From the NCBI RefSeq assembly GCF_036588685.1, contig NC_086375.1:63178001-63242000 (forward strand): a stretch of DNA of 64,000 nucleotides, given 5' to 3'. Made by a program: the position numbers and the translations under genes. Below the pieces are notes generated by a model. It made no database searches. It saw only the letters and a list, made by a program, of their open reading frames with translations, and was not told the origin of the DNA. This DNA is from Mytilus trossulus (Eukaryota). Shown in pieces: positions 33,801 to 60,585 of the stretch. Numbering within the stretch: the stretch's first letter is position 1; each line of letters starts with the position of its first letter.

Positions 33801-35531
33801 TGTGTTGATTATTATGTTCTAAATCCCTTTCTGGTTCTTTGGGTTCAGATATTTTCTCTTGATTAAGGCAAGCAACATAACTTGTACATCTTATAAAGGT
33901 TCTTATCTCAGGGTGAATCCAGACAATTTTAAACATAAGTGGTGGTATTCTCAACCAAGGATAAAAAGGAGAGTTAACTATATGATCCCTGAATTCAAAT
34001 GCATTAATCTTCCATAAAAGAGGAGGTCACCAGAACCCCTGGGATCCACCACTGTGTCTTAAAGCAGGTACAATAAAACAAGCATTGTACATGTACTTCT
34101 GTCCACTGCAAATTCATATTATTTTCATTCAAAAGTATAAATGTTCACAATTTTAAAGACTATATTTCCTTTGTTTCCATATTCAGTTTGCTTTCATGCA
34201 ATGAAAAGTTCAATTCTATTGTTACACAGGTTCTACTGACAACTGATAAACCCCTCTTGTATCCTTCTATCTACCAAAAGGGTGTTTGAGAAAATACAAT
34301 AAGTCCAAGTTCAGAATTTTCTTCTTTGGAAGTGTTCAATAACCTGTAAGTACTTGAAAAAAAATGTCATATTCAACCTTCCCATGACTATTTTAATGTT
34401 ACAACAGTAGAGGAACATGGAATATTGAAAATTTACTGAAGAAATTGTCGAAATATATCTGCAATCATTAATTTTACTCGAATTTACTGTTGTGAACTTG
34501 CAATATCCTACGATGCGCGTACCGAGTTATCTCCCTTTGATCTCCGCTTCGCAACGAATAATCTGACACAATTGCGTATCCGGGGTTTTTGTGATCTGAT
34601 AAAGTACTTTTAGAAGCAAAAAATGGTTTTACTTCATATTTTATACCCCTCAACACGTTACCAAACCTATTTGAGGAATTATAAAGGATTTCCGTGGACC
34701 TACGCAAATTTTCAGAAAAAAAGTTTCACTTCACTCGTGAATTTATAACATTTTTACAACACTTTTTAATGATAATTATATAAAATAAGGAAGCTTATTC
34801 AATCTAGAATTGAACTCTTTGGTTTTTATCAATGTACGAGTACAAATAAGACAATACGAGTTCAAAAACCACGAGGCGTGCACGTTTACCAAAAATCGTA
34901 AACTCTGACCTTTTATCACGTGACCAATGTCTTGACCTTAGAAGCCATTAAATCGTTTGCCGTTCAACTGTCAAATGGTTGCAAACGAAAACTTTGTAAA
35001 TACAGCTGTTTCACAAGCCAAACTGCTCTCAAACACACTATTCATAAGAACTTGGAAATTATCTCAATAGATATAGGAAGATGTAGTATGAGTGCCAATG
35101 AGACAACTCTCCATCCAAATAACAATTTAAAAAGTAAACCATTATAGGTTAAAGTACGGCCTTCAACACGGAGCCTTGGCTCACACCGAACAACAAGCTA
35201 TAAAGGGCCCCAAAATTATTAGTGTAAAACCATTCAAACTGGAAAACCAACGGTCTATATATAAACAAAATTAATACATACTAATCATTTGTATACTTGG
35301 ATATTGAGGTTTAAAAATTTCTATAGTTGTTTATATCCACAGCCTGTGGTCTCTGTGCGGTTGTTGTATCGTTGTCAATCATACAACATTTCGGTGGTTT
35401 TTTATCAATGGCGTTTCATTTTTAAGGATATTTTTTTATCTTTTTTTATGCGAAATGTTTGATTTTTTTGTTTTTATTTATGTACTATTTGATTTTAAAA
35501 TCGGATGTTTTATAATTACTGTTTGATAAAG

Positions 35532-38500
35532 GTAAACGACCAGCACCAAACCCTAGCGTTTATGACTTTCCCGAGGAATACTGGCCATCACCAGACACAG
35601 AACTAGTACCTTCAGACATGAGTGCAAATCAGGTAGTCATTGTTGAACATACGTTAATGCTAGCTTAAAAAAATCTAATTCTTATAATAATTCCTCACTT
35701 AGCAATACATGCATCTACAAGTAAGAGTACGAAGTATTGGACTGCCAATGCGACTATTCGTGAAGCCAATTTTACATTAGTGGTGACAATCGTGTCAATA
35801 GTTCATCGCATAAGCTTGTTATCAGCTAAATAAGATCAATGGAGGTTGAAAAATATCATTGTACTTTGTACTTAAAAAGTTTCTCAAATACATATTCCAA
35901 ATGTTGTTATTTCATTTCATACTTATATCATACATTTATGACTGATAATAAGACTATCTTCAGCTATTGATGGAGTGTAGCAGAGAAAAAAGAAGGAAAA
36001 AAGAAAACCATTCTAATAGCGCCGTAGAACCTAATTCGTAAGCATCTCCTTTATACCCTCTTGTATATACTTGGCATTGTTTACTGATTGATTGAAGTGA
36101 AACAATTCGAAAAAAGAATTTGTGAACAAATATTTTGTAAATGTTTAAGTTTCGCTACATATGATATATAGTATGTGGTCTGATCATTCACTTTAATACC
36201 ATGTTACAGATCACACAAGCTCGAGAAAAACTTTGCATGTTTGATATGAAGAGATGAAACATGCACAATTATTCAATTTCGGCTGCACATTGAAAAAATG
36301 AGATAGTTACAATATAGTTTTCCATAAATTTACAAAAGGGGAATCTTTATCACACAGGGATCGACATATTATAACCAGACATATCCAAACCATGCACACC
36401 ATTCATTAAGAAGGTTAATATTACAAACGTTGTTTCAAATTAAAAAATAAACAGCTGCGCCATGAGCGCATGATACGCCCGATGTCTTATGTGGAAGTTA
36501 TATGCAATAATCATAAATAGTTTCTGAGAAAGTTTTAAGCAATAACCATATATAGTTTTTGAGACACAGCGGGAAACCCCCCCACCCTGGTTTTTTTTTT
36601 TACAAAAAACTCAATATCACTAAAATAAAATTTTGAATCAAAACCAAAAAGTATACAGATCTTTAGATTAATGAGACAAAGAAGTGTGTAAAGTTTTAAG
36701 CAATAATCATAAATTATTTTTGAGATACAGCGTGACATGTAAAAAAAACTCCCTTGTTTAACAAAATACTCAATAACTCAAAAATAAAATTTTGAATCAT
36801 CAGCACAAAGTATACAGATCTTTAGATCGATATAACAAAGAAGTGTGTAAAGTTTTAAGCAATAATCATAAATTGTTATAGAGATACGGCACAACATGTA
36901 AAAAACCCTCCCCCTTTTTAACAAAATACTCGATCACACAAAAATAAAATTTTGAATCATCATCAAAAAGTATACAGATATTAAGATTTATATAACTAAG
37001 AAGTGATTAATATAACAAAGACATGTGTAAAGTTTGTAGCAATAATCATAAATCTATTTTGAGATATGGCGCGACATGTAAAAAAAACCTCCCCCTTTTT
37101 TACAAAATACTCAATAACTCAAAAATGAAATTTTGAATCATCACCAAAAAGTATACAGATATTAAGATTTATATAACTAAGAAGTGTTTAAAGTTTTAAG
37201 CCATAATCAAGAATAGTTTTTGAGATACAGTGCGACATGTGAAATAAACACCCCCTGTTTTAGCTACTAAGTGCCGTAAATCAAAAAGTTTAAATCTAAT
37301 TTTCACCAAAAAGTATACAGATCATTTGACCATCATAAGAAACAATTATATTAAGTTTCATGAAATTTGGATAAGTTGTTCTCAAGTTACGGTGCGACAT
37401 GTTTACGCCGGACAGACGGACGGACAGACGGACGGACACCGGACATGTGTATACCATAATACGTCCCGTCAAAATTTTGACGGGCGTATAAAAATAGCAT
37501 TACAAATGTGTTGGTTATAGCATATATCAAATAATTGAATTGGGTATGACTTAGTTAAAGATCTCCCTGTTCATATTCCTTACATTAAACACCGGTTATA
37601 ATGTAGTTCTGAAAAGCAGTGGTAATTAAGGATTTATTGAGCTGCGAATTAAACACAAACCATCGACTGGTGTTAATTTCTGCGAGGAAAGAAACATCTA
37701 TTATGTAAATGGCATTTATATTTTTTACAGATCGTCTTTAGACCTTTTAAATGCGGTAAGAAGAACTGAACGTTTGCCAATTGTCTCCCTTAAACAGAAT
37801 CTTTCCGTGGTAAAACAAGCACTAAGTTATCCGGATAGTACAATATTTGAACAGAAAATCACAGAGAAGAGAAAGACCTTTGTCAAGGTATTTAACTGTT
37901 GATGTGCGAGTTCTGTCGATCAGATTTCAAACTACTAGTAATTGATGTTTCGATTAAAATCGTCAATTAAACAGTTTTGGTTTTCGTACACAAATTGGGT
38001 TTTACCCCCATAAATCAAAGTTTAAAAGGAATAGGTAAAAAATAAAATATATATTCTGATAATTTAATCTCAATTGAAACCGCTAAATTCTTAGACTTGT
38101 TCCTTTGTTCGTTTCAAACAGTGCTGCTAACGAAGAGTGAAAAAAAACCAAATAGTATTATAATCCACTTCACGTACCGCTATAAAGATGATATCCTGTT
38201 TATACCATTCAACTTGTTCTTATAAAAGCACCACAGATATATGATCATACAGTAGCTCTGCTTCGTATTTCCACTGTTTAAATATGTTTGTATATTTTTT
38301 AGACTTTGAAAGAAGTTTTTGCTGAACGAAATATCGGAGACTCTCCTAATATAGATTGTCCTGAGCAGCTGACTAGGGAGATAGGTAGACGATTGCGACT
38401 TTGCTTAATGGGTCAAAGAACAGTCAAATCCATACCATGTGGCATCGATATAACAATCGATAACCTCAAGTCTAATGTTACTGAAACAAGAACCTCAAAC

Positions 38501-38536
38501 ATTTATCCAGAATCAAGTTCAGAAGTGTGCGTGTAA
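35532..38536 (+). CDS. Last four coding exons of an uncharacterised gene ('gene X'); 5' part unresolved
   Basis: Exons 35532-35632, 35964-36037, 37731-37887 and 38303-38536 have AG/GT ends and chain in frame without stops (GKRPAPNPSVYDFPEEYWP...LLMECSREKRRKKE...SSLDLLNAVRRTERLP...TLKEVFAERN...EVCV*). AATAAA at about 38632. No family recognised. Confidence 0.65.
36450..37493. mobile_element. HINE-like element, family 3 (mirror copy 53756-54799)
   Basis: atacgccc / gggcgtat subterminal inverted motif, ~160-bp tandem units, GGAC microsatellite, terminal palindrome cccgtcaaaattttgacggg. Confidence 0.75.
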
Positions 38537-38996
38537 TAACTTCAATGTACCATGGTTTGGACAAGCGGACCTTAAAATTTGCATTGCCTAAATCTGGTTG
38601 ATCATCATCATCTTTATGCTGTTTTAACTTCAATAAAACATTTAGTCGTTTTTTTCCTATTCTCTTATTTTTGTTTCATTCTGTATAGTTTATTTTGTAT
38701 TTGTTGAACTGTTATTCTGTTATTCTGCTTGAAGATAAAAAAAGAAAATCCGTATTGAAAAAGTAACAAGGACAAAATGGTACATGGTTGTAATTGCCAA
38801 TGAAAGATATACAAACCTATCAACACACCACACTAACACACACAAACCAACAAAATGAAACACAGTCTTAACAAAAGGCAAATATTTAGCTAATCGCCAC
38901 AGTGTCTTAACTAATTGCAAATAAAGAGGTGATAACAACATTTAGCATTTAATATTGGTTCTCCTGGTATAAACCACCCATCAATGTAGAAATAAA

Positions 38997-39117
38997 ACCA
39001 ATACTTGCACCAAATAAACAAGTATAATCAATACTTGTACAAAATATCCAAGTATAATCAATACTTGTACCAAATATCCAAGTATAACCAATACTTGTAC
39101 CAAACATCCAAGTATAT
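38997..39117. repeat. 30-bp minisatellite, 4 copies (mirror 52132-52252)
   Basis: atacttg recurs at 39001, 39031, 39061 and 39091. Confidence 0.9.
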
Positions 39118-40320
39118 ATATGTACACACTCTGCATATAAACGCCATAAAAGGCTATAATAAATACCAAAGACTTTGTAAAGTGGATAGTCGCACGACAA
39201 CGCCGATGCTCTATATTTAATGATAAATAATCTCAATACATACATATATATCTACACATATAATATATAACTCAAACATCAGTATCGGCACAAAAAACTC
39301 TCCAAATAAAAAGCTTAATAAACTTTAACCAGAATTAAAATTTTACCAAGAAAATTCGACTGCTCAGATTGACGATGTCGTGCTGAATGATAACATAGGC
39401 AATAAAATACCGCGAAAATAATTTTGAAGCGGGAAAACATTACGCCCTCTATGCTACATATGATGAAACACCCAGGAGAAATTAATTTCACTCTAATGCA
39501 CTGCCCATTTAAACGAATGAAATTATAATTCTAAAATTGATTTTGTAATTGGTAAAGAGGTAGGGCCAATTTCAAAAATTGACGACAGAATAGAATTTAC
39601 TTTTAGAAACAAAAAATAAAAATGCTTTCGACCAATATCTCGATTAACATATACATTGTATTATGATATGTGTGATAAATAGATCAATTAAACCATCAAA
39701 AAGGATGAAAGTCCAATGTGCGGAATTTACGGTGATTTTAGGTGGAAAAAAACAGGGAATCACCCAGAAGGACATTTCCAACCAAAAAAAGTAATGTTTT
39801 TGTGACTGTTGTAATTTATTCTTCTTTTTCCCTCAAAAATGAAATTGGTTTGGTGTGTCCTTATCACATAAAAAAACAAAACTTTTTAATAAAAAAAATT
39901 GTAACAACACTAATTGTACTGATATAGCTCCTAAATAACACAGTATAACAAGCGTCGGCGTGGCTCCATCAATAGAGCATAGAACTACTATTCAAAGACT
40001 GTTTTGAAGATAACATTCGAATCTCGCTTAGACTTATTGCATTTTTTGTGTTGTTATATTAAATTTTGATGTTTCTATCATATTTTTTGGATGTTGGCTC
40101 AATTCATACAGTCATTCTGGTTTATTTTGACTTTATAGTATATCATTTTATTAAAGAAAAAATAATGTATCTCTTATTGTGTGCATTCCCATGACTGTCC
40201 ATACTCTTGACTTACTTTCTATTCAATGTTTACATTTATAACATATGTGCACGGAACAACTGCCGTCAAACTGATGTAGGTGCCTGTACATAACTAATAA
40301 CACGAAATTTTATTATATAG

Positions 40321-41165
40321 TGTAACGTGTATATATATATAACCAGGCGTTTATATCGCAAACGTCCGTTCCAGTAAATACTTGGATCCAAGTTGTTCAC
40401 AAACAAAATGGTAATACTAAAAAATACAACTATCTATATTATGCACAATGAACTAAAATATACACACTGACTCTTTGTCGAAATAAAGTTACAACGGACA
40501 ATTATATATATACAAATATAATACAATAAACCAGCCTGTCCTCAAGATGGGACGATGTGTCACTTAGAGATAGTATAGCTGGTACAGCTTGTCCTCCGAA
40601 TGGGACAGTTTGTCAGTACAAGACAGAGCGGTCTGGTACAACTTGTCCTCCGAGTGGGTCAACCTGTCACTACCAGAAAGTGCGGCCTGGAACAACTTGT
40701 CCTCCGAGTGAGACAACCTGTCACTACCAGACAGAGCGGGCTGATACAGCCTGTCCTCCGAGTGGGACAGTCTGCTATGTCAATCCCGTCAACATGTACA
40801 TCCACCTTGTACCCAGTACAAAGTGTCCTCTGAATATCAAGGCTCTTCTAGCACTAATTATATCCGACGTACGCTCAGTTGAAGGATGGCAGCTCATCGA
40901 CAGTCAACCGACAGCCCCGTGTATCGTTTCTCACTCTCTTATATACCCCAGGACGACTATACTATTTACTTGATAGGGGTGTTCTCTAAATGTTCCCGAT
41001 ACCGAACACAAGAGTACCTCCCAAACAACCCCCATACCGATGGACCCAACCACTGACTCTCCCGCCAAACGTCTAAATCTGTTTAACTCTTTCTCAAGCA
41101 TAAACCATGCATTGATACACCAAGATTCTACTTGATTATAACCTTAACGACCAATAAACATTACA
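40321..41165. mobile_element. Solo LTR (Gypsy-like), 845 bp, with an internal 54-bp tandem repeat (mirror 50084-50928)
   Basis: atag|TGTAA ... TTACA|atag: TG...CA ends, 5-bp terminal inverted repeat, 4-bp TSD. TATA-like gggtatataag on the minus strand at about 40940. Confidence 0.75.
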
Positions 41166-41570
41166 ATAGCAATGAAGCCCAAATGCTGCGTGTGTAAAAT
41201 ACACATAACTTAAAATGAGGCCATTGTATACAAGTTTCAAAACAACACAAACAATTTTTCGAAACCTTTTTAAACTTTCTAAACTAATTTAAATAAACTA
41301 TTCCCGATGAGAGACTGTCAAAATCAAAGTCTTACAAATAAAAGAACAAACATAAAAGACAAAAGAAGATTTTCAAGAACATTCATTGTATTGTTCTGTA
41401 AACTATATCAACCTTAGATTAGCACAAGATTCGATCAAATAGTGAAAAACAATATGACATTTTGTGTAGTGTATTTGAAGACAGTCTGTATATATATATA
41501 AAAATAAAAAATAGGTATTTGTTTTGTTTTTATGACTTGTAAGCGACCATATGATAATTAAGCCCGTCCT

Positions 41571-44500
41571 TTAACCAATGATCTGCTGTCCTGTAGCCGC
41601 CCTGAAAAAGATACAGAAACATAGATCAACTTAGGTCTAGTATTCGTTTGTTGATGCGGTTCATAAGTGTTTAGGAAAACCCCCAAATGGCTAGTGTAAA
41701 ACCATTCAAACAGGAAAAGCAACTGTAACTTTATAGCTCAAGTTGTTTGGTGTGAGCTTACGTCCGTGTTGAAGGACGTACTTTGACCTAATTTGGTTTT
41801 CTTTTATAAATACGTAAAAACGATGTTTACGATTACATGATATTTTTAAAGATATTTTTTTAATTAAAGCTCTAAAGTTAAAAAAAATATCAAACAAATG
41901 AATTCCAAAACTTACGGTCTAATATCTATCAACTAACTTTAACCCAGTTTACGATGACATGATATTTTTAAAGATAATTTTTTAATTAAAGCAAAATCAA
42001 ACAAATGAATTCCAAAACTTACTGTTTTTCGCAAAGGAAATTTGCCTGGCGATCACACCGTTCGTCGTTCCAGTTATAATTTTCGTGGTGAAGGAGATCC
42101 ATGCAATCTTCTCCGAGGTTTCCACTAGAGTTTGGCTCTCCTGGCCACCAATGAGTGAATTCCTGTTGGTTGATGGACACTCCAGTTTTTACCCACTGCC
42201 ATTCGCCTTCTACTAAAGAATCTGTACCTCCTATCCACACACCATCGGACATACCTTTATGTATTAATAATAAACATAAGTCACATTTTTCTCTCCAAAT
42301 TTCGATTACAACCAGTGATTTTTACAAGTTTATGGACCTGAACTTTTTTTAAAGCTAGAACAAAATAACACAGATTTTTCTTCGAAATAACAGAAGTGCG
42401 TCAAGTTAATCGATTTTGTTGATAGGGTTATCATATAAATAAATCTAAGGATATGAGGGAATTGAGTTGATTCTTTCCCTTCAAATAATAAAGGATCACA
42501 TTCATCACCATGACAAACTTACAGAACACGAAGTGAATAAGATTTTTTCTTCCCATTTCCACCTTGAATATTGAGCATTGTTTGTCACCAAAAAGGGATT
42601 TCGATAGTACTATACAAATCCTTGCGTCGAATGAGTGAAAATAAGAATGTCAACCCTTAGCTGGAGAAATGCAAGAACGGGAAAATGTTTGAAATATCAT
42701 ATAAAATTTCAGTTTTATCGTGATTAAAGCTATAATGATTGATGATTGGTGGTTGTTATTACATGTACATGTATATACTTTTCCTTAAAAAAATGATGTC
42801 GAACATTCACATAAGCAACACGACAGGTGCCACATGTGGAGCAGAATCTGCTTACCCTTCCGGAGCACCTGAGATCACCCCTAGTTTTTGGTGGGGTTCG
42901 TGTTGTTTATTCTTTATGCCCGCGTCACACTGTCCCGATTTTTACGAATTTTCGCGCTAAAATACATTTAAAGTGCCATGCGCGATATGCACTGGTCAGT
43001 CTAATACGACAGTTAAGAAAGACGTTCACAAAACATGGAGCTTACATCATATGATTCTATGCGAACATGAAAGGCGACAGCGTTGTTTCTATTAATTCAA
43101 ATGGAACAAGAAGAGCAGCTATTACAGGCTCAGGATTTACTTTAACAAGTAAAATATTATTTTTTGTCAATTTTTCATATCAAGTAACATAATGAAAATC
43201 ATAAACGCGCCTCGTACTCGTACTGCAGGTACAAGTATATAGGGAAACCAACTTTTTCATTATTCTGATTTTTTATGTATCGTCTGAGTTGTTGTCACAC
43301 GAATGTTTACTCCTTAACCATTTTGTTTTCTATATGTTATATCTTGCCGCATTTGTTGCTTCCCCCACATCCTTCCTTTTGTCTATAGTATTATGATATT
43401 CTCCTGGAAAGGGCTCTTTTGAATAAAAGGGATCAACGAACCCATGACCTTACCTTAAGGAAAGATCAGTAAACATGGGCATGATTATGGGTGATTATTC
43501 AGACTAGTGCACACATTTTTAGCTCGTATGTTCCAATTTTGTATCTCCCTTTCTCTGTGCTATGTGTATCCGATTGCGAACTTTCCACTTCTGTATCTAT
43601 TTTTCTTTTGGTCTTGTACTTTCCTGCTAGACTCATACCCCTCCCTTTTCCTCTTCCTCTCCCTCTCCCTGATTTTGGTGGCATTATATGCAGAGACTCA
43701 GAGTCAAGTTTTACCCTTCAAGCCCAATGTCTTCTATCTTATGATTAAACCAGAAATGAAATGTACAATATAATATATATTCAATATTGATCAAATCAAA
43801 TGCATCGTTAGCTGTACACGACGTCTTTTAGACATCGTATGGCCATCGCGCCATCATTGTAATCCATCCTGTAGCCTTCGTAATCCATCATGTAGCCTTC
43901 GTGATCCATCGTGAAGGCTTCGGCTGAGATATGAAGCTTAAATACCCGTCTTCGGTTAACCTTCGTATGTCCATCTTTTGCTATCGTATATAAATTCGGC
44001 ACCATCGTATAGACTTCGTTATTCATCGTACTTGCTTCGGTCACATTTTGGTATTTTAACGAGATCGGGACCAACTTCGTACGAACTTACAATTTTCGCA
44101 TTCGGGTGTCCATCGTATATAAAAATCGGGACAGTGTGACGCGGGCATTAGTTTTCTATGTTGTGGCATGTGTTTTTCTGTTTTTCTTTTTCATTTTTAG
44201 CCATGGCGTTGTCAGTTTGTTTTAGATTTATGATTTTGACTTTCCCTTTGGTATTTTTCGTCCCTCTTCTAGATGTTCAAAATGTACCAATGAATACCCT
44301 ATAAGAAGAAGATAGATATTCGGAGGGCTTTACCTGACTTGAATTCCCTTCTAAGAAAACCTTCTACAAAGTTCTGTTCTCTTGCTGTTTCAATTATTGC
44401 CAAATCTGAACCAAACACTTGGCAATACATCTGTGATAAAACAACAGATTTATATACACACATATATATCCATCTTACATTTCCGATTTGTCCTTATGTT

Positions 44501-45755: not shown

Positions 45756-46011
45756 GTTCAATTTAATAATGTGGAAATACAGTAGTCTATACAGTAGATA
45801 ACCCATGACCTTGGACACAGAAACACCAATCTTAAAAGTAAACTGTTCCTGTACTTTGACCAGGAATCGTAACAGACAAAAATAACTGCGTTCTCAAATA
45901 CATTTCACGGCAACTACTACTCGACGTTTAGTAGATATTTCGAGAGATCTTCCCATATTTAGCATTACTATCACGGAACGACAAAAATTGTGATAGTCTG
46001 GAACCTACAAA
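45756..46011. promoter_or_regulatory. Putative bidirectional promoter and 5' UTRs between the divergent lectin start codons (second copy 58093-58348)
   Basis: ATG of lectin 1 (45755, minus) and ATG of lectin 2 exon 1 (46012, plus) are separated by 256 bp. Upstream non-coding exons cannot be excluded. Confidence 0.6.
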
Positions 46012-49000: not shown

Positions 49001-49678
49001 CCGATGGTGTGTGGATAGGAGGTACAGATTCTTTAGTAGAAGGCGAATGGCAGTGGGTAAAAACTGGAGTGTCCATCAACCAACAGGAATTCACTCATTG
49101 GTGGCCAGGAGAGCCAAACTCTAGTGGAAACCTCGGAGAAGATTGCATGGATCTCCTTCACCACGAAAATTATAACTGGAACGACGAACGGTGTGATCGC
49201 CAGGCAAATTTCCTTTGCGAAAAACAGTAAGTTTTGGAATTCATTTGTTTGATTTTGCTTTAATTAAAAAATTATCTTTAAAAATATCATGTCATCGTAA
49301 ACTGGGTTAAAGTTAGTTGATAGATATTAGACCGTAAGTTTTGGAATTCATTTGTTTGATATTTTTTTTAACTTTAGAGCTTTAATTAAAAAAATATCTT
49401 TAAAAATATCATGTAATCGTAAACATCGTTTTTACGTATTTATAAAAGAAAACCAAATTAGGTCAAAGTACGTCCTTCAACACGGACGTAAGCTCACACC
49501 AAACAACTTGAGCTATAAAGTTACAGTTGCTTTTCCTGTTTGAATGGTTTTACACTAGCCATTTGGGGGTTTTCCTAAACACTTATGAACCGCATCAACA
49601 AACGAATACTAGACCTAAGTTGATCTATGTTTCTGTATCTTTTTCAGGGCGGCTACAGGACAGCAGATCATTGGTTAA
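46012..49678 (+). CDS. Predicted chimera A: lectin-2 signal-peptide exon plus lectin-1 exons 4-5, 106 aa
   Basis: 46012-46069 (MLWKYFSVFLTLAILGSPL, phase-1 donor g|gtaagt) joins 48995-49226 (phase-1 acceptor) and 49648-49678 in frame. Expression not shown. Confidence 0.5.
46776..48066. mobile_element. HINE family-1 copy in intron 1 of lectin 2 (duplicate 59113-60403)
   Basis: Same internal repeat, GAC microsatellite and terminal stem-loop as 7244-8633. Confidence 0.75.
48253..48325 (+). repeat. 73-bp templated insertion at the rearrangement junction
   Basis: Exact copy of 45801-45873 (acccatgaccttggacacag...ggaatcgtaac). Confidence 0.93.
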
Positions 49679-52600
49679 AGGACGGGCTTAATTATCATAT
49701 GGTCGCTTACAAGTCATAAAAACAAAACAAATACCTATTTTTTATTTTTATATATATATACAGACTGTCTTCAAATACACTACACAAAATGTCATATTGT
49801 TTTTCACTATTTGATCGAATCTTGTGCTAATCTAAGGTTGATATAGTTTACAGAACAATACAATGAATGTTCTTGAAAATCTTCTTTTGTCTTTTATGTT
49901 TGTTCTTTTATTTGTAAGACTTTGATTTTGACAGTCTCTCATCGGGAATAGTTTATTTAAATTAGTTTAGAAAGTTTAAAAAGGTTTCGAAAAATTGTTT
50001 GTGTTGTTTTGAAACTTGTATACAATGGCCTCATTTTAAGTTATGTGTATTTTACACACGCAGCATTTGGGCTTCATTGCTATTGTAATGTTTATTGGTC
50101 GTTAAGGTTATAATCAAGTAGAATCTTGGTGTATCAATGCATGGTTTATGCTTGAGAAAGAGTTAAACAGATTTAGACGTTTGGCGGGAGAGTCAGTGGT
50201 TGGGTCCATCGGTATGGGGGTTGTTTGGGAGGTACTCTTGTGTTCGGTATCGGGAACATTTAGAGAACACCCCTATCAAGTAAATAGTATAGTCGTCCTG
50301 GGGTATATAAGAGAGTGAGAAACGATACACGGGGCTGTCGGTTGACTGTCGATGAGCTGCCATCCTTCAACTGAGCGTACGTCGGATATAATTAGTGCTA
50401 GAAGAGCCTTGATATTCAGAGGACACTTTGTACTGGGTACAAGGTGGATGTACATGTTGACGGGATTGACATAGCAGACTGTCCCACTCGGAGGACAGGC
50501 TGTATCAGCCCGCTCTGTCTGGTAGTGACAGGTTGTCTCACTCGGAGGACAAGTTGTTCCAGGCCGCACTTTCTGGTAGTGACAGGTTGACCCACTCGGA
50601 GGACAAGTTGTACCAGACCGCTCTGTCTTGTACTGACAAACTGTCCCATTCGGAGGACAAGCTGTACCAGCTATACTATCTCTAAGTGACACATCGTCCC
50701 ATCTTGAGGACAGGCTGGTTTATTGTATTATATTTGTATATATATAATTGTCCGTTGTAACTTTATTTCGACAAAGAGTCAGTGTGTATATTTTAGTTCA
50801 TTGTGCATAATATAGATAGTTGTATTTTTTAGTATTACCATTTTGTTTGTGAACAACTTGGATCCAAGTATTTACTGGAACGGACGTTTGCGATATAAAC
50901 GCCTGGTTATATATATATACACGTTACACTATATAATAAAATTTCGTGTTATTAGTTATGTACAGGCACCTACATCAGTTTGACGGCAGTTGTTCCGTGC
51001 ACATATGTTATAAATGTAAACATTGAATAGAAAGTAAGTCAAGAGTATGGACAGTCATGGGAATGCACACAATAAGAGATACATTATTTTTTCTTTAATA
51101 AAATGATATACTATAAAGTCAAAATAAACCAGAATGACTGTATGAATTGAGCCAACATCCAAAAAATATGATAGAAACATCAAAATTTAATATAACAACA
51201 CAAAAAATGCAATAAGTCTAAGCGAGATTCGAATGTTATCTTCAAAACAGTCTTTGAATAGTAGTTCTATGCTCTATTGATGGAGCCACGCCGACGCTTG
51301 TTATACTGTGTTATTTAGGAGCTATATCAGTACAATTAGTGTTGTTACAATTTTTTTTATTAAAAAGTTTTGTTTTTTTATGTGATAAGGACACACCAAA
51401 CCAATTTCATTTTTGAGGGAAAAAGAAGAATAAATTACAACAGTCACAAAAACATTACTTTTTTTGGTTGGAAATGTCCTTCTGGGTGATTCCCTGTTTT
51501 TTTCCACCTAAAATCACCGTAAATTCCGCACATTGGACTTTCATCCTTTTTGATGGTTTAATTGATCTATTTATCACACATATCATAATACAATGTATAT
51601 GTTAATCGAGATATTGGTCGAAAGCATTTTTATTTTTTGTTTCTAAAAGTAAATTCTATTCTGTCGTCAATTTTTGAAATTGGCCCTACCTCTTTACCAA
51701 TTACAAAATCAATTTTAGAATTATAATTTCATTCGTTTAAATGGGCAGTGCATTAGAGTGAAATTAATTTCTCCTGGGTGTTTCATCATATGTAGCATAG
51801 AGGGCGTAATGTTTTCCCGCTTCAAAATTATTTTCGCGGTATTTTATTGCCTATGTTATCATTCAGCACGACATCGTCAATCTGAGCAGTCGAATTTTCT
51901 TGGTAAAATTTTAATTCTGGTTAAAGTTTATTAAGCTTTTTATTTGGAGAGTTTTTTGTGCCGATACTGATGTTTGAGTTATATATTATATGTGTAGATA
52001 TATATGTATGTATTGAGATTATTTATCATTAAATATAGAGCATCGGCGTTGTCGTGCGACTATCCACTTTACAAAGTCTTTGGTATTTATTATAGCCTTT
52101 TATGGCGTTTATATGCAGAGTGTGTACATATATATACTTGGATGTTTGGTACAAGTATTGGTTATACTTGGATATTTGGTACAAGTATTGATTATACTTG
52201 GATATTTTGTACAAGTATTGATTATACTTGTTTATTTGGTGCAAGTATTGGTTTTATTTCTACATTGATGGGTGGTTTATACCAGGAGAACCAATATTAA
52301 ATGCTAAATGTTGTTATCACCTCTTTATTTGCAATTAGTTAAGACACTGTGGCGATTAGCTAAATATTTGCCTTTTGTTAAGACTGTGTTTCATTTTGTT
52401 GGTTTGTGTGTGTTAGTGTGGTGTGTTGATAGGTTTGTATATCTTTCATTGGCAATTACAACCATGTACCATTTTGTCCTTGTTACTTTTTCAATACGGA
52501 TTTTCTTTTTTTATCTTCAAGCAGAATAACAGAATAACAGTTCAACAAATACAAAATAAACTATACAGAATGAAACAAAAATAAGAGAATAGGAAAAAAA

Positions 52601-55600
52601 CGACTAAATGTTTTATTGAAGTTAAAACAGCATAAAGATGATGATGATCAACCAGATTTAGGCAATGCAAATTTTAAGGTCCGCTTGTCCAAACCATGGT
52701 ACATTGAAGTTATTACACGCACACTTCTGAACTTGATTCTGGATAAATGTTTGAGGTTCTTGTTTCAGTAACATTAGACTTGAGGTTATCGATTGTTATA
52801 TCGATGCCACATGGTATGGATTTGACTGTTCTTTGACCCATTAAGCAAAGTCGCAATCGTCTACCTATCTCCCTAGTCAGCTGCTCAGGACAATCTATAT
52901 TAGGAGAGTCTCCGATATTTCGTTCAGCAAAAACTTCTTTCAAAGTCTAAAAAATATACAAACATATTTAAACAGTGGAAATACGAAGCAGAGCTACTGT
53001 ATGATCATATATCTGTGGTGCTTTTATAAGAACAAGTTGAATGGTATAAACAGGATATCATCTTTATAGCGGTACGTGAAGTGGATTATAATACTATTTG
53101 GTTTTTTTTCACTCTTCGTTAGCAGCACTGTTTGAAACGAACAAAGGAACAAGTCTAAGAATTTAGCGGTTTCAATTGAGATTAAATTATCAGAATATAT
53201 ATTTTATTTTTTACCTATTCCTTTTAAACTTTGATTTATGGGGGTAAAACCCAATTTGTGTACGAAAACCAAAACTGTTTAATTGACGATTTTAATCGAA
53301 ACATCAATTACTAGTAGTTTGAAATCTGATCGACAGAACTCGCACATCAACAGTTAAATACCTTGACAAAGGTCTTTCTCTTCTCTGTGATTTTCTGTTC
53401 AAATATTGTACTATCCGGATAACTTAGTGCTTGTTTTACCACGGAAAGATTCTGTTTAAGGGAGACAATTGGCAAACGTTCAGTTCTTCTTACCGCATTT
53501 AAAAGGTCTAAAGACGATCTGTAAAAAATATAAATGCCATTTACATAATAGATGTTTCTTTCCTCGCAGAAATTAACACCAGTCGATGGTTTGTGTTTAA
53601 TTCGCAGCTCAATAAATCCTTAATTACCACTGCTTTTCAGAACTACATTATAACCGGTGTTTAATGTAAGGAATATGAACAGGGAGATCTTTAACTAAGT
53701 CATACCCAATTCAATTATTTGATATATGCTATAACCAACACATTTGTAATGCTATTTTTATACGCCCGTCAAAATTTTGACGGGACGTATTATGGTATAC
53801 ACATGTCCGGTGTCCGTCCGTCTGTCCGTCCGTCTGTCCGGCGTAAACATGTCGCACCGTAACTTGAGAACAACTTATCCAAATTTCATGAAACTTAATA
53901 TAATTGTTTCTTATGATGGTCAAATGATCTGTATACTTTTTGGTGAAAATTAGATTTAAACTTTTTGATTTACGGCACTTAGTAGCTAAAACAGGGGGTG
54001 TTTATTTCACATGTCGCACTGTATCTCAAAAACTATTCTTGATTATGGCTTAAAACTTTAAACACTTCTTAGTTATATAAATCTTAATATCTGTATACTT
54101 TTTGGTGATGATTCAAAATTTCATTTTTGAGTTATTGAGTATTTTGTAAAAAAGGGGGAGGTTTTTTTTACATGTCGCGCCATATCTCAAAATAGATTTA
54201 TGATTATTGCTACAAACTTTACACATGTCTTTGTTATATTAATCACTTCTTAGTTATATAAATCTTAATATCTGTATACTTTTTGATGATGATTCAAAAT
54301 TTTATTTTTGTGTGATCGAGTATTTTGTTAAAAAGGGGGAGGGTTTTTTACATGTTGTGCCGTATCTCTATAACAATTTATGATTATTGCTTAAAACTTT
54401 ACACACTTCTTTGTTATATCGATCTAAAGATCTGTATACTTTGTGCTGATGATTCAAAATTTTATTTTTGAGTTATTGAGTATTTTGTTAAACAAGGGAG
54501 TTTTTTTTACATGTCACGCTGTATCTCAAAAATAATTTATGATTATTGCTTAAAACTTTACACACTTCTTTGTCTCATTAATCTAAAGATCTGTATACTT
54601 TTTGGTTTTGATTCAAAATTTTATTTTAGTGATATTGAGTTTTTTGTAAAAAAAAAAACCAGGGTGGGGGGGTTTCCCGCTGTGTCTCAAAAACTATATA
54701 TGGTTATTGCTTAAAACTTTCTCAGAAACTATTTATGATTATTGCATATAACTTCCACATAAGACATCGGGCGTATCATGCGCTCATGGCGCAGCTGTTT
54801 ATTTTTTAATTTGAAACAACGTTTGTAATATTAACCTTCTTAATGAATGGTGTGCATGGTTTGGATATGTCTGGTTATAATATGTCGATCCCTGTGTGAT
54901 AAAGATTCCCCTTTTGTAAATTTATGGAAAACTATATTGTAACTATCTCATTTTTTCAATGTGCAGCCGAAATTGAATAATTGTGCATGTTTCATCTCTT
55001 CATATCAAACATGCAAAGTTTTTCTCGAGCTTGTGTGATCTGTAACATGGTATTAAAGTGAATGATCAGACCACATACTATATATCATATGTAGCGAAAC
55101 TTAAACATTTACAAAATATTTGTTCACAAATTCTTTTTTCGAATTGTTTCACTTCAATCAATCAGTAAACAATGCCAAGTATATACAAGAGGGTATAAAG
55201 GAGATGCTTACGAATTAGGTTCTACGGCGCTATTAGAATGGTTTTCTTTTTTCCTTCTTTTTTCTCTGCTACACTCCATCAATAGCTGAAGATAGTCTTA
55301 TTATCAGTCATAAATGTATGATATAAGTATGAAATGAAATAACAACATTTGGAATATGTATTTGAGAAACTTTTTAAGTACAAAGTACAATGATATTTTT
55401 CAACCTCCATTGATCTTATTTAGCTGATAACAAGCTTATGCGATGAACTATTGACACGATTGTCACCACTAATGTAAAATTGGCTTCACGAATAGTCGCA
55501 TTGGCAGTCCAATACTTCGTACTCTTACTTGTAGATGCATGTATTGCTAAGTGAGGAATTATTATAAGAATTAGATTTTTTTAAGCTAGCATTAACGTAT

Positions 55601-56536
55601 GTTCAACAATGACTACCTGATTTGCACTCATGTCTGAAGGTACTAGTTCTGTGTCTGGTGATGGCCAGTATTCCTCGGGAAAGTCATAAACGCTAGGGTT
55701 TGGTGCTGGTCGTTTACCTTTATCAAACAGTAATTATAAAACATCCGATTTTAAAATCAAATAGTACATAAATAAAAACAAAAAAATCAAACATTTCGCA
55801 TAAAAAAAGATAAAAAAATATCCTTAAAAATGAAACGCCATTGATAAAAAACCACCGAAATGTTGTATGATTGACAACGATACAACAACCGCACAGAGAC
55901 CACAGGCTGTGGATATAAACAACTATAGAAATTTTTAAACCTCAATATCCAAGTATACAAATGATTAGTATGTATTAATTTTGTTTATATATAGACCGTT
56001 GGTTTTCCAGTTTGAATGGTTTTACACTAATAATTTTGGGGCCCTTTATAGCTTGTTGTTCGGTGTGAGCCAAGGCTCCGTGTTGAAGGCCGTACTTTAA
56101 CCTATAATGGTTTACTTTTTAAATTGTTATTTGGATGGAGAGTTGTCTCATTGGCACTCATACTACATCTTCCTATATCTATTGAGATAATTTCCAAGTT
56201 CTTATGAATAGTGTGTTTGAGAGCAGTTTGGCTTGTGAAACAGCTGTATTTACAAAGTTTTCGTTTGCAACCATTTGACAGTTGAACGGCAAACGATTTA
56301 ATGGCTTCTAAGGTCAAGACATTGGTCACGTGATAAAAGGTCAGAGTTTACGATTTTTGGTAAACGTGCACGCCTCGTGGTTTTTGAACTCGTATTGTCT
56401 TATTTGTACTCGTACATTGATAAAAACCAAAGAGTTCAATTCTAGATTGAATAAGCTTCCTTATTTTATATAATTATCATTAAAAAGTGTTGTAAAAATG
56501 TTATAAATTCACGAGTGAAGTGAAACTTTTTTTCTG
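48324..56536 (-). repeat. Right arm (inverted A) of the 8,213-bp inverted repeat
   Basis: Reverse complement of 34713-42925. Confidence 0.97.
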
Positions 56537-58092
56537 GCCATGGCGTTGTCAGTTTGTTTTAGATTTATGATTTTGACTTTCCCTTTGGTATTTTTCGTCC
56601 CTCTTCTAGATGTTCAAAATGTACCAATGAATACCCTATAAGAAGAAGATAGATATTCGGAGGGCTTTACCTGACTTGAATTCCCTTCTAAGAAAACCTT
56701 CTACAAAGTTCTGTTCTCTTGCTGTTTCAATTATTGCCAAATCTGAACCAAACACTTGGCAATACATCTGTGATAAAACAACAGATTTATATACACACAT
56801 ATATATCCATCTTACATTTCCGATTTGTCCTTATGTTATCACGTAAATGAGATTTTTGTTTTTCAGTTACTGTCGTGTCCGATATTTTCGGCCAAAAATG
56901 AACTTTATGTTGTTCGTTCTTATGTTGCACTGTTATACCACTGTCCCACGTTAGGGGGAGGGGGGGACCCCGCTAACTTGTTTAACCCCGCCACATTATT
57001 TATGTGTGTGCCTGTCACAAGTCAGGAGCCTGTAATTCAGTGGTTGTCGTTCGTTTGTTGATGTGTTACATATTTGTTTTTCGTTTACATTTTTTATATA
57101 AATAAGGCCGTTAGTTTTCTCGTTTGAATTGTTTTACATTGTCCTATCGGGGCCTTTTATTACTGACTATGCGGTATATGTTTTGCTCATTGCTGAAGGC
57201 CGTTGGTGACCTACAGTTGTTTATGTCTGTGTCATTTTGCTCTGTTGTGGACTGTTTTCTTATTGGCATCAGACCACATCTTCTTTTTTATATTTAAAAT
57301 AATTCTAAGGAAAAGGTTAATGGATTTTAGAACTATAAATCATTCATATATATGAAGAATAAGTCTATAGGTACTAAGAAAGGATAACATTTCAAAATTT
57401 GTCTCGCGTTCATGGCTGAAACAAATATAGAGAACATTAAAACGACCTCTTTTACAAGTGGTGACTAACTTGACAGTTATTTCCAAACAATTTAAACAAA
57501 GCGAAAATAAAATATATACAGCAGTTCATATAAATATTTAGTATTGGTTAAATAATAAAATAACAAATATATATTATGTATCTTAAAACTTACAAATGCC
57601 TCGGCCCATGATGCTTTAGTAGAAGCATACAATTTATAGCAGGAATCGTCATGCCTCATATAACCATTAGGACAATCGCAAACAGCTACAACATAACATA
57701 TACGGCTTATATATTAGATATTTTGTCATACATTTTGTAATTAAATTAGATTTATTCATTTGTGTTTTCTCGACAAATTTATTTCATCATATTATGAGTT
57801 ATGTATGTACTGTATTTGTCCATTGAAGAACGCAGCTTTGGGGTAATTCAATCAATTATAAATCATAGCCGGCATAAAAATGCTTTAACTATACGTATTT
57901 ACCAAAATATATTTGGTATATGTCATTCAAAGAGTTAGACGTTAACGATATGACGAAATGTTAACGTTAAGTTTATGACCAAAAAAAACTTTAAAAAAAC
58001 TCCCAAGCATCCAATATTTTAAAACAAGATAAAACAATCTTACCATTCACAACAAACAGTCCAAATATTGCAATCGTGGCAATCAATTTCAT
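52713..58092 (-). CDS. Predicted chimera B: lectin-1 exons 1-3 plus the last four exons of gene X, 267 aa
   Basis: Exons 58044-58092, 57594-57685 and 56671-56767 (phase-1 donor), then 55617-55717 (phase-1 acceptor), 55212-55285, 53362-53518 and 52713-52946: 804 nt, open frame. Depends on the gene X model. Expression not shown. Confidence 0.45.
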
Positions 58093-60585
58093 GTTCAATT
58101 TAATAATGTGGAAATACAGTAGTCTATACAGTAGATAACCCATGACCTTGGACACAGAAACACCAATCTTAAAAGTAAACTGTTCCTGTACTTTGACCAG
58201 GAATCGTAACAGACAAAAATAACTGCGTTCTCAAATACATTTCACGGCAACTACTACTCGACGTTTAGTAGATATTTCGAGAGATCTTCCCATATTTAGC
58301 ATTACTATCACGGAACGACAAAAATTGTGATAGTCTGGAACCTACAAAATGTTGTGGAAATATTTTTCAGTTTTTCTCACTTTAGCTATTCTCGGATCAC
58401 CACTAGGTAAGTTAAATTTCTGTACACAAAATATTCGAAATTACTTATCTGAACTATCGTTTTATGTATGAAACTGAATTTCAATTTATTGACATGTAGT
58501 AATCGAATTAAAACTTTGATTTCGTTATAAGACATACGAGCTCATATGTACATGACTGTACTTATAACGAAATCAGAGACTCATGTCGATTTATAGACAA
58601 ATTCACGGTTCAAGGTCTAACTTTTTTTATTGAAAAAGAAACGTCTTTTAGAATTAGAGTAGATGGTCGTTAACTTGGCCACAATCAATAATAGGGTATC
58701 TAGTTTAAAAAAAATGTGTCCGATAACCCCCGCCCTTGAGTTCGTAATTTTAAGGACATTTTGCAGTTTTTTAAGTTATTATCTTGAATACTACTATAGA
58801 AAGAGAGTAAACAGCAATAATGTTCAGCATGATTTCATTACGGGTATCTACGGATTATTTTCTACAAATACTTCAACAGGACTAAAATTGTCAATTGACC
58901 AAGTAAGGAGTTATTGCCCTTTATAGTCAATGTTTTAACAATTTTTCGTAAATTTTTGGAATCATTTACAAAAATCGTCTACTCTGAACTCTACATAGAC
59001 AGATTCAGACAGTCTTAGCCACAATCATGATTAATTTAGGGTATATTGTTAAAAAAAAAGAATATGTCGGATGCGGACCACGCCTGCCAACCAACATGGC
59101 CGCTACAGCTACCTAGAGGCTCTAAAGAGCCTGTGTCGCTCACCTTGTTCTATGTGAATATTAAACAAAGGAAGCAGATGGATTCATGACAAAATTGTGT
59201 TTTGGTGATGGTGATGTGTTTGTACATTTTACTTTACTGAACATTCTTGCTGCTTACAATTATCTCTATCTATGATGAACTTGGCCCAGTAGCTTCTGTG
59301 GAAAACGTTACCGGTAGTAAAAATTTACAAATTTTATGAAAATTGTTTAAAATTGACTATAAAGGACAATAACTCCTTAGGGGGTCAATTGACCATTTTG
59401 GTCATGTTGACTTATTTGTAAATCTTACTTTGCTAAACATTATTGCTGTTTACAGTTTATCTCTATCTATAATAATATTCAAGATAATAACCAAAAACAG
59501 CAAAATTTCCTTAAAATTACCAATGCAGGGGCAGGAACCCAACAACAGGTTCTTTGATTTATTTGAAAATTTCAGGGCAGATAGATCTTGACCTGGTTAA
59601 CAATTTCACTACCTGTCAGATTTGCTCTAAATGCTTTGGTTTTTGAGTTATAAGCCAAAAGCTGCATTTCACCCCTATGTTCTTTTTTTAGCCATGGCAG
59701 CCATCTTGGTTGATTTGGCGGGTCACGCCACACATTTTTTAAACTAAATACCCCAATGATAATTGTGGCCAAGTTTGGATTAATTTGGCCCAGCAGTTTC
59801 AGAGCAGAAGATTTTTGTAAAAGATATATAAAATTTACAAAAAATGGTTAAAAATTGACTTTAAAGGGCAATAACTCCTAAAGGGATCAACTGAAAATTT
59901 TGGTCATGTTGACTTATTTGTAAATCTTACTTTGCTGAACATTATTGCTGTTTACAGTTTATCTCTATCTATAATAACATTCAAGATAATAACCAAAAAC
60001 AGCAAAATTTCCCTAAAATTACCAATTCAGGGACAGTAACCCAACAAAGGTTTGTCCGATTCATCTGAAAATTCCAGGGCAGATAGATCTTGACCTGATA
60101 ATCAATTTTACCCCGTCAGATTTGCTCTAAATGCTTTGGTTTTTGAGTTATAAGCCAAAAACTGCATTTTACCCCTATGTTCTATTTTTAGCCATGGCGG
60201 CCATCTTGGTTGGTTTGGCGGGTCATATCACACATTTTTTTTAATTTAGATACCCCAATGATGATTGTGGCCAAGTTTGGTTAAATTTGGCCCAGTAGTT
60301 TCAGAGGAGAAGATTTTCGTAAAAGCTAACGACGGACGACGACGGACGACGGACGCCAAGTGATGAGAAAAGCTCACTTGGCCCTTTTGGCCAGATGAGC
60401 TAAACATAGAACAGAGGGGTAAAATGCAAGCTGCGACTATCATCTTGAAACTGCTATGAGTAAAAAAAAATCTAACAGGTGCAATAATGTTCAGAATGTT
60501 GAGATATACATACTGTCCGTCTCTAAGTCAAAACAGTCAGATGACTTCTTACAGGAGTTAATGACCTTACTGATCGTCAGATGAC
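56537..60585 (+). repeat. Second copy (C) of the 4,049-bp direct repeat
   Basis: Matches 44200-48248 and continues into unique sequence containing the rest of lectin 2. Confidence 0.97.

What the first reader, a model, noticed from the sequence alone, without database searches (positions are those of the whole stretch)
34713..60585. Complex inverted-plus-direct duplication that keeps the parent genes and creates two in-frame chimeric genes
Seen: order A-B-C-ins-invA-C-D, with A = 8,213 bp, B = 1,274 bp (single copy) and C = 4,049 bp. Constant offsets imply no indels between copies. Lectin 1, lectin 2 and gene X each keep an undisturbed copy. Each copy of the head-to-head interval now drives one parent lectin outward and one fusion inward, and both fusions join phase-1 donors to phase-1 acceptors. 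Inference: new-gene birth by exon shuffling caught at a very early stage in an immune or shell lectin locus. The alternative is misassembly.
Basis: partly seen in the sequence, partly recalled or inferred. Interest (0 to 1): 0.9.

Follow-up and report, generated by a model that had tools for sequence, protein, structure and literature searches.

The report
Fresh complex duplication in mussel lectin pair
A mussel (Mytilus-type) chromosome carries an error-free inverted-plus-direct duplication around two head-to-head immune-type lectin genes, with copy-and-switch scars typical of a real replication accident; it is a known kind of rearrangement, its two by-product "fusion genes" are unproven, and sequencing reads could not be checked here.

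Summary
The layout is exactly as reported: A 34713-42925 equals the reverse complement of 48324-56536 (0/8213 mismatches), and C 44200-48248 equals 56537-60585 (0/4049). B (1,274 bp) is a multi-copy Harbinger-type MITE. The 75-nt filler is 4 nt plus an exact 73-nt copy of 45801-45873, taken from the 256-bp interval between the two lectin start codons.

Truncated repeats at all four breakpoints show that A-B-C-D was the parent order. The filler, a short stutter and 0-2-nt microhomologies fit replicative template switching. No assembler can invent such junctions. The junction set is that of the known human "dupINVdup" class; the assembled form is its spacer-flipped conformer.

Both parent lectins are intact, each with four exons and intron phases 1/0/1. 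Mytilus homologues support them at 87% and 91% identity. Chimera A is a real in-frame 97-aa ORF but encodes only half a lectin domain. Chimera B rests on "gene X", which has no supporting evidence.

The scan holds four notes on this same stretch and none on other DNA.

Verdict: probably a real, very young structural variant and a new example of a known kind. New-gene birth is not shown.

The parts
34713..42925 (+). Segment A (8,213 bp), parental copy. It holds EPN-lectin exon 4 and several repeats.
   Evidence: Exact reverse complement of 48324-56536. Its first ~260 bp are the right end of a full young transposon that continues leftwards beyond A.
34113..34972 (.). Part of a very young high-copy transposon. 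The outer breakpoint of A (34712/34713) lies inside it.
   Evidence: At least 30 genomic copies at 96-99% identity cover 34113-34972. The inverted copy keeps only the 260-bp fragment 56277-56536, which marks it as the derived copy.
42917..44147 (.). PIF/Harbinger-type non-autonomous transposon (1,231 bp). It makes up the bulk of segment B (42926-44199) and sits in intron 3 of the EPN lectin.
   Evidence: TTA target duplication at 42914-42916 and 44148-44150, and 28-nt perfect terminal inverted repeats. Many genomic copies at ~92-94%. A ends 9 nt inside its left end; C starts 52 nt beyond its right end.
44200..48248 (+). Segment C, copy 1 (4,049 bp). It holds EPN exons 1-3 (minus strand), the 256-bp bidirectional interval and QPD exon 1 (plus strand). 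Its right end is truncated inside a 40-bp tandem array.
   Evidence: Identical to 56537-60585. Array truncation seen.
45801..45873 (+). Source of the templated insertion, inside the interval between the two lectin start codons.
   Evidence: 73/73 identity to 48253-48325.
48249..48323 (+). Junction 1 filler. Four nt (CATG, part of a 6-7-nt stutter) plus a 73-nt templated copy, which overlaps the start of inverted A by 2 nt (AC).
48324..56536 (-). Inverted copy of A. It starts with 9 nt of the MITE end and finishes with a 260-bp fragment of the young transposon.
56537..60585 (+). Segment C, copy 2. Junction 2 (56536/56537) is blunt, and this copy runs on into D through the intact 4-unit 40-bp array (60536-60694).
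42019..45755 (-). Parent EPN lectin (perlucin-like, 157 aa). Exons: 45755-45707, 45348-45257, 44430-44334, 42254-42019.
   Evidence: tblastn of homologues, GT-AG sites and phases, 86.6% identity to M. californianus perlucin-like P0151, Pfam Lectin_C.
58349..62375 (+). Parent QPD lectin (perlucin-like, 158 aa). Exons: 58349-58406, 61167-61255, 61738-61834, 62143-62375.
   Evidence: 91.1% identity to M. galloprovincialis perlucin-like P0162, including the signal-peptide exon. Pfam Lectin_C.
46012..49230 (+). Chimera A (predicted only). QPD exon 1 copy 46012-46069 plus EPN exon 4 copy 48995-49230 gives a 97-aa ORF. Its intron contains junction 1.
   Evidence: In-silico splice and translation. No expression data.
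56671..58092 (-).
   Evidence: Unspliced read-through stops after 11 codons.
38306..38536 (+). There is no evidence that it is a gene.
   Evidence: No homologue, no paralogue in the genome, no Pfam match, only weak acceptor candidates.

Best explanation
This is a genuine, very recent complex structural variant made in a single event in a Mytilus-type mussel genome. The parent order was L-A-B-C-D.

Mechanism (inferred). During replication, or repair of a break, the growing strand switched template three times over short range:
1. It left the 40-bp tandem array at the end of C, stuttered, and copied 73 nt from the lectin promoter interval.
2. It then used a 2-nt microhomology to copy A on the opposite strand.
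3. It finally rejoined bluntly at the start of C.
Read in the opposite sense, the same junctions describe synthesis that stops 9 nt inside a MITE, copies C-B-A backwards and resumes 52 nt beyond the MITE. That is the classical dupINVdup product. The assembled order is its conformer, with the 5.4-kb spacer flipped between the 8.2-kb perfect arms.

Consequences (shown). Both perlucin-like lectin genes stay intact. Each copy of their shared 256-bp head-to-head promoter interval also faces inward. One inward unit has an in-frame 97-aa ORF: the QPD signal peptide plus the EPN C-terminal half-domain. The other is an EPN gene that has lost its last exon.

Which steps are shown and which inferred. The sequence identities, junction anatomy, polarity and ORFs are shown. 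The single-event template-switch mechanism and the young age are inferred. Transcription and function of the fusions are not shown and are, on balance, unlikely to amount to new functional genes yet.
For: - Both repeat pairs are exactly identical.
- Polarity is clear at all four breakpoints. A full MITE, a full young transposon and a full 4-unit array sit in the parental contexts; a 9-nt stub, a 260-bp stub and a 1.25-unit stub sit in the derived contexts.
- The 73-nt filler is an exact copy of sequence 2.4 kb away in cis. There is a 6-7-nt stutter, and microhomology of 2 nt at one junction and 0-1 nt at the others.
- These features match published replication-based complex variants. One example is a dupINVdup with a 100-bp junction insertion (PMC6286558). 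The subclass is defined in PMC5338099, and multiple conformers generated through inverted repeats are described in PMC11293582.
- No N gap separates the copies and they show no haplotype-type divergence. Gaps and divergence are hallmarks of false duplications (PMC9516828).
- Junction sequences of this kind must exist in sequenced molecules, because an assembler cannot create them.
- Gene models: with homologues.
Against: - No read-level evidence was obtained.
- Perfectly identical kilobase repeats in a reference assembly always carry some risk of artefact.
- Microhomology is minimal and one junction is blunt, so end-joining of a broken end is as good as template switching for that step.
The parent order therefore rests on internal polarity alone.
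Confidence: 0.62

Rival explanations
1. Assembly or library artefact. The true genome is A-B-C-D, and the extra [filler - inverted A - C] comes from one or a few chimeric molecules or reads. These could arise by in-vitro polymerase template switching during amplification, or through gap filling with a chimeric long read, and were then threaded into the contig.
For: The copies are 100% identical, so nothing in the sequence proves two physical copies. The assembly holds no alternative haplotig to compare with. No reads could be examined. In-vitro strand-displacing amplification is known, from general knowledge, to give short-range inverted chimeras with microhomology.
Against: There is no N gap at or between the copies, and no heterozygous divergence, unlike typical false duplications (PMC9516828). 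Three chained switches with a templated 73-nt insertion are not what ligation chimeras or graph errors produce. An assembler would need to traverse A and C twice against the well-supported direct C-to-D path. Both inner breakpoints bracket one MITE, which suggests a biological cause.
Confidence: 0.25
2. The event is real but was triggered by a break at the MITE rather than by a stalled fork. Attempted excision, or breakage at the Harbinger-type element, left two ends: 42925, 9 nt inside the element, and 44200, 52 nt outside it after resection. The left end invaded the sister chromatid in inverted orientation at the end of C, with a short filler. It copied C-B-A backwards and was then end-joined bluntly to the right end. 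This gives the dupINVdup conformer, and the spacer later flipped or was assembled flipped.
For: The forward path skips almost exactly the element. Junction 2 is blunt, as expected for end joining. By my rough estimate, both inner breakpoints falling within 9 and 52 nt of the two ends of one 1.2-kb element has a chance probability of order 1e-4. The element has perfect 28-nt terminal repeats and an intact TTA duplication, so it could still be a transposase substrate.
Against: The breakpoints are near the element termini but not at them. The family looks middle-aged, with a best full-length copy at 94%, whereas the rearrangement shows zero divergence. No transposase gene lies in the window. The model needs a spacer flip, or an arbitrary assembler choice, to give the assembled order.
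Confidence: 0.2
3. One reading: two new, functional chimeric genes have been born by exon shuffling and are at the earliest stage of their life.
For: Each inward-facing unit has a complete copy of the bidirectional promoter interval and a first exon. Chimera A has a strong donor (consensus GTAAGT), the native exon-4 acceptor, an open 97-aa frame, a stop in the last exon and the native polyadenylation signals.
Against: The in-frame join follows from intron phases shared by the paralogues. Chimera A lacks exons 2-3 and so half the lectin fold, including the partner of its last cysteine. Chimera B's acceptor gene has no support. There are no expression data, and zero divergence leaves no room to detect selection.
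Confidence: 0.08
4. An older duplication whose copies are kept identical by gene conversion between the repeats.
For: Long inverted repeats elsewhere are known to be homogenised by conversion (general knowledge).
Against: Both the inverted pair and the direct pair are identical at every one of 12,262 positions, right up to the breakpoints. The short filler is also identical to its source at 73/73. Conversion would not be expected to preserve that.
Confidence: 0.04

Closest known systems
dupINVdup complex structural variants of the human genome (paired-duplication inversions; Brand 2015 as cited in PMC5338099; case P4 in PMC6286558)
   Same: Two segments are duplicated and the segment between them is single-copy. 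One duplicate is inverted. Two novel junctions lie in cis, one of them with an inserted sequence of ~75-100 bp. Microhomology is small or absent. The class is attributed to FoSTeS/MMBIR. The junction set here is identical to A - filler - (C B A inverted) - C.
   Different: As assembled, the spacer B-C is in direct orientation, which makes this the flipped conformer. The scale is kilobases rather than hundreds of kilobases. The inner breakpoints bracket a MITE. The organism is a bivalve and the variant sits in the reference assembly itself.
DUP-TRP/INV-DUP rearrangements formed by iterative template switches (PMC11293582, PMC4352052)
   Same: An inverted copy embedded between direct copies, chained template switches, and several possible conformers with the same junctions.
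   Different: Those events are started by pre-existing inverted low-copy repeats and produce a triplicated segment. Here no pre-existing inverted repeat is used at a junction and nothing is triplicated.
Chimeric genes formed by partial or complex gene duplication (known mainly from Drosophila population genomics; my own knowledge, not checked here)
   Same: A duplication breakpoint inside genes recombines a promoter plus first exon with a foreign downstream exon, while the parents stay intact.
   Different: Here the partners are paralogues with the same exon phases, the product is a truncated domain, and expression is untested.
False duplications in genome assemblies (PMC9516828)
   Same: Near-identical adjacent copies in a haploid reference create apparent extra genes.
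   Different: There is no gap between the copies, no heterozygous divergence, an inverted arrangement and templated junction scars. Read depth, the decisive criterion, could not be tested.

Membership tests
dupINVdup complex structural variant | Two flanking segments at copy number 2 and a middle segment at copy number 1 | tested here: met
   In the assembly, A occurs twice, C twice and B once. Not verified by read depth.
dupINVdup complex structural variant | Two novel junctions in cis: right end of the distal duplicate joined to the inverted right end of the proximal duplicate, and inverted left end of the proximal duplicate joined to the left end of the distal duplicate | tested here: met
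   Junction 1: 48248 - filler - rc(42925). Junction 2: rc(34713) - 44200.
dupINVdup complex structural variant | The single-copy middle segment is inverted | tested here: inconclusive
   B-C lies in direct orientation in the assembly. The classical form is the conformer obtained by flipping the spacer between the identical 8.2-kb arms. The two cannot be told apart from the junctions.
Replicative template switching (FoSTeS/MMBIR) scar | Templated insertion copied from nearby sequence at a junction | tested here: met
   73/73-nt copy of 45801-45873, 2.4 kb away in cis.
Replicative template switching (FoSTeS/MMBIR) scar | Microhomology at the junctions | tested here: inconclusive
   2 nt (AC) at filler/inverted A. 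0-1 nt plus a 6-7-nt stutter at C/filler. 0 nt at junction 2.
C-type lectin (perlucin-like) genes | Lectin_C domain with a carbohydrate-site motif (EPN or QPD) and WND | tested here: met
   Pfam PF00059, E = 6e-11 and 6e-9 on the last exons. The motifs are read directly in the translations. Annotated Mytilus perlucin-like homologues at 87% and 91% identity.
PIF/Harbinger-type MITE (segment B) | 3-bp TWA target duplication, terminal inverted repeats, many copies | tested here: met
   TTA on both sides and a 28-nt perfect TIR. More than 40 copies scored. No transposase is encoded, so the superfamily is assigned from the TSD and TIR only.
False (assembly) duplication | Gap between the copies, or haplotype-level divergence between them | tested here: not met
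   The only N run is 17075-17915, 17 kb away. 0 differences in 12,262 nt.
False (assembly) duplication | Half or low read depth and discordant reads over the copies | not testable with these tools
New chimeric gene | Transcribed and spliced as predicted | not testable with these tools
No RNA runs were obtainable.
New chimeric gene | Open reading frame across the fusion | tested here: met
   Chimera A has a 97-aa ORF. Chimera B has no defensible acceptor.

The most novel reading that the evidence does not exclude
The variant is real, segregates in the population and was triggered at a transposon end. At least chimera A is transcribed and secreted as a half-domain lectin. It would then be a direct snapshot, with unblurred scars, of the process that feeds the massive presence/absence variation and lectin diversification of mussel immune loci.
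Probability: 0.1. Interest if true: 0.65.

Novelty: new member of a known kind. Interest (0 to 1): 0.35.

Why it matters
Mussels show extreme gene presence/absence variation (PMC7653742), and bivalves have greatly expanded C-type lectin families (PMC10140915). The mutational processes behind this are poorly documented at base resolution.

If reads confirm this locus, it gives a zero-divergence example in which every breakpoint, the filler and the transposon context can still be read. It would show that short-range template switching around a MITE can double a bidirectional lectin promoter and create partial gene copies in one step. It would also be a convenient natural test of whether such by-products are expressed.

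If reads do not confirm it, it is a warning that lectin 'gene gains' in this assembly need depth checks.

Tried and rejected
I then made one exact-protein look-up of ORFs crossing junction 1 and of their parental counterparts. None of the four is in the collection, so it carries no information.
- Orthologous locus. The look-up of encoding contigs for the M. californianus homologue was closed.
- Base rate of exact inverted repeats in flanking DNA.
- Earlier scan notes on other identical duplications in this genome gave no read-checked precedent.
- 'Gene X'. No homologue, no paralogue, no Pfam match and no good acceptor.
- A protein alignment suggested an exon-3-like remnant just upstream of EPN exon 4. 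It is not significant at the DNA level (score 14 against a shuffle mean of 15.6) and was dropped.
- Alternative transposition of the MITE as the direct mechanism was rejected, because the junctions are not at the element termini.
- Repeat-mediated misjoining was rejected. Junction 2 joins the middle of a transposon to unique sequence with no shared homology.
- Spliced (joined-exon) models were translated only inside the sandbox. They were searched exon by exon, and the joined step was left out.
- The species could not be named. The 1.41-Gb M. galloprovincialis assembly of PMC11183127 differs in size from this 1.30-Gb genome.
Full report
**Observation**

- The repeat finder gives one inverted pair, 34713-42928 / 48321-56536, and direct copies at an offset of 12,337.
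- Base-by-base comparison refines the pairs. A = 34713-42925 is the perfect reverse complement of 48324-56536: 8,213 nt with 0 mismatches, the first mismatch being 42926/48323.
- C = 44200-48248 is identical to 56537-60585: 4,049 nt, no mismatch and no indel.
- B = 42926-44199 is 1,274 nt, and 75 nt (48249-48323) lie between C and inverted A.
- A self-comparison of the whole window shows nothing else of this kind.
- The only N run is 17075-17915, far from the structure. I did not touch it.
- The window is C3:63178001-63242000 of a 1.30-Gb, 541-contig genome. Whole-genome searches find A and C only at these two places each, so the assembly has no alternative haplotig.

**What the pieces are**

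- B is not unique DNA. It is a 1,231-bp non-autonomous transposon (42917-44147) with a TTA target duplication on both sides and 28-nt perfect terminal inverted repeats. Dozens of copies at about 92-94% identity occur elsewhere in the genome. The TTA duplication and the repeats point to the PIF/Harbinger superfamily.
- The left edge of A (34712/34713) lies inside a different and very young transposon. More than 30 copies at 96-99% identity cover 34113-34972.
- The right edge of C (48248, equivalent to 60585) lies inside a 40-bp tandem array that has four units in the C'-D context, 60536-60694.
- The filler is CATG followed by a 73-nt stretch (48253-48325) identical to 45801-45873 within C.

**Polarity**

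At every breakpoint one context is complete and the other is truncated.
- The MITE is whole between A and C. Only its first 9 nt are attached to inverted A.
- The young transposon is whole across L|A. Only its last 260 bp are attached to C'.
- The 40-bp array is whole in C'-D. It is cut after 1.25 units before the filler.

This shows directly that L-A-B-C-D was the parent arrangement, and that 48248-filler-48324 and 56536/56537 are the only two novel junctions.

**Junction anatomy and mechanism**

- Junction 1 reads: end of C, then a 6-7-nt stutter, then the 73-nt copy of sequence lying 2.4 kb away on the same strand, then inverted A. The 73-nt copy overlaps inverted A by 2 nt (AC).
- Junction 2 is blunt, with only a T-rich resemblance on one side.
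- Chained short-range switches, a templated insertion, a stutter and minimal microhomology are the published signature of replication-based complex rearrangements (FoSTeS/MMBIR). One published dupINVdup has the structure forward - 100-bp insertion - inverted block - forward (PMC6286558). The subclass definition is in PMC5338099.
- The reverse complement of junction 1 is 'end of A - filler - inverted end of C'. The junction set here is therefore exactly that of a dupINVdup, A - filler' - (C B A inverted) - C - D.
- The assembled order A - B - C - filler - A' - C - D is the conformer in which the 5.4-kb spacer between the two identical 8.2-kb arms is flipped. The two forms cannot be told apart without reads that span a whole arm. 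Inverted-repeat-bearing rearrangements are known to exist as several conformers (PMC11293582).
- In the dupINVdup reading, forward synthesis stops 9 nt inside the MITE and resumes 52 nt beyond it. That explains why both inner breakpoints bracket this element. By my rough estimate the chance of this is of order 1e-4.
- Whether the trigger was a fork stalled at the element or a break made at it, with end joining closing the blunt junction 2, cannot be decided. The family's 6% divergence argues mildly against recent excision.
- All of this mechanism is inference from the scars.

**Is it real?**

- Sequence alone cannot prove that two physical copies exist.
- Points against an artefact:
  - An assembler cannot invent a stutter plus a templated 73-mer, so the junctions must exist in sequenced molecules.
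  - Ligation chimeras do not carry such features.
  - The copies have no gap between them and no haplotype-type divergence. Gaps and divergence are two of the four hallmarks of false duplications (PMC9516828).
  - The transposon bracketing looks biological.
- The other two hallmarks, depth and discordant reads, could not be tested.
- My estimates are about 0.7 that the structure exists in the animal's germline DNA and about 0.25 that it is an artefact.
- Zero differences in 12,262 compared positions put a 95% upper bound of about 2.4e-4 per site on divergence. That corresponds to roughly 1e4-1e5 generations for mutation rates of 1e-8 to 1e-9. This is an inference, because the mussel mutation rate is not known to me.

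**Genes**

- A profile-free search with the EPN exon returned many C-type lectins. Aligning four of them to the window located all exons.
- EPN lectin, minus strand: exons 45755-45707, 45348-45257, 44430-44334 (all in C) and 42254-42019 (in A). The MITE lies in intron 3. The product is 157 aa.
- QPD lectin, plus strand: exons 58349-58406 (in C'), 61167-61255, 61738-61834 and 62143-62375 (in D). The product is 158 aa.
- Both genes have GT-AG introns of phases 1, 0, 1, and the two proteins are 43% identical to each other. The two start codons are head to head, 256 bp apart, and the 73-nt filler comes from that interval.
- The models are backed by annotated proteins: perlucin-like of M. californianus (P0151, 86.6% identity) and of M. 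galloprovincialis (P0162, 91.1%, including the signal-peptide exon). Pfam Lectin_C matches the last exons.
- The organism is therefore a Mytilus-type mussel. I could not name the species.

**The fusions**

- Chimera A: copy 1 of C places QPD exon 1 (46012-46069, consensus GTAAGT donor, phase 1) upstream of the inverted copy of EPN exon 4 (48995-49230, native acceptor, phase 1).
  - Joined in the sandbox, the two give an open 97-aa frame ending at the native stop, with the native polyadenylation signals downstream.
  - The frame match is automatic, because the two paralogues share intron phases.
  - The product would be a signal peptide plus only the C-terminal half of the lectin domain. It would lack exons 2-3 and the partner of its last cysteine, so a folded lectin is unlikely.
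- Chimera B: copy 2 of C places EPN exons 1-3 (58092-56671, minus strand) in front of inverted A.
Only weak acceptor candidates are present.
  - Without splicing, the frame stops 11 codons after exon 3.
- Flipping the spacer does not change any of these gene consequences. No expression data could be obtained.

**Comparison with what is known, and novelty**

- The rearrangement is a member of a known class (dupINVdup-type complex variants made by template switching). Chimeric transcription units as by-products of partial duplication are also known.
- What is particular here is the complete absence of divergence, the legible scars, the MITE bracketing, and the setting in a mussel lectin pair. 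Mussels show massive gene presence/absence variation and bivalve lectin families are expanded (PMC7653742, PMC10140915).
- I rate it a new member of a known kind, of moderate interest pending read confirmation.

**Earlier notes of the scan**

Four first-reader notes cover parts of this same stretch.
- The 73-nt promoter-derived filler and the transposon bracketing were both confirmed here. The element is not 'young': its best copy is 94% identical.
- Chimera A was confirmed as an ORF.
- Chimera B was not supported.
- No note on other DNA describes the same thing.

Noticed in passing
window 62349-62852: A 51-bp tandem array (9.9 copies, 88% matches) begins inside the last coding exon of the QPD lectin. 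It repeats the exon's final codons with the stop codon, producing a ladder of '...VCERP-stop'-like units downstream. It resembles the exon-edge minisatellites that other notes report for this genome.
   Followed up: no
window 34113-34972 (extends left of 34113): A transposon family with more than 30 genomic copies at 96-99% identity, so probably recently active. Its type was not determined.
   Followed up: partly
window 38959-39532: A 574-bp unit with 98-99% identical copies on many chromosomes. Elsewhere it recurs at 7,800-bp spacing (C3:66931866, 66939666, 66947466). It contains a 30-bp internal tandem repeat.
   Followed up: no
window 40340-41165: A repeat family (86-92% copies genome-wide) carrying a 54-bp tandem array that reads as a Cys/Pro/Thr-rich 138-aa ORF (40557-40973). 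It looks like a repeat, not a gene.
   Followed up: no
window 20783-22837 (+) and 26716-29238 (-): Two long intronless ORFs of 684 aa and 840 aa. By eye, the first starts with a BTB/POZ-like motif and the second looks transposon-derived. Neither was tested.
   Followed up: no
window 17075-17915: A run of 841 N (gap or masked).
   Followed up: no
window 46776-48070 and 59113-60407: Intron 1 of the QPD lectin, and its copy, contain a 1.3-kb repeat with internal ~500-bp direct repeats and more than 40 genomic copies at 90-93% identity.
   Followed up: no
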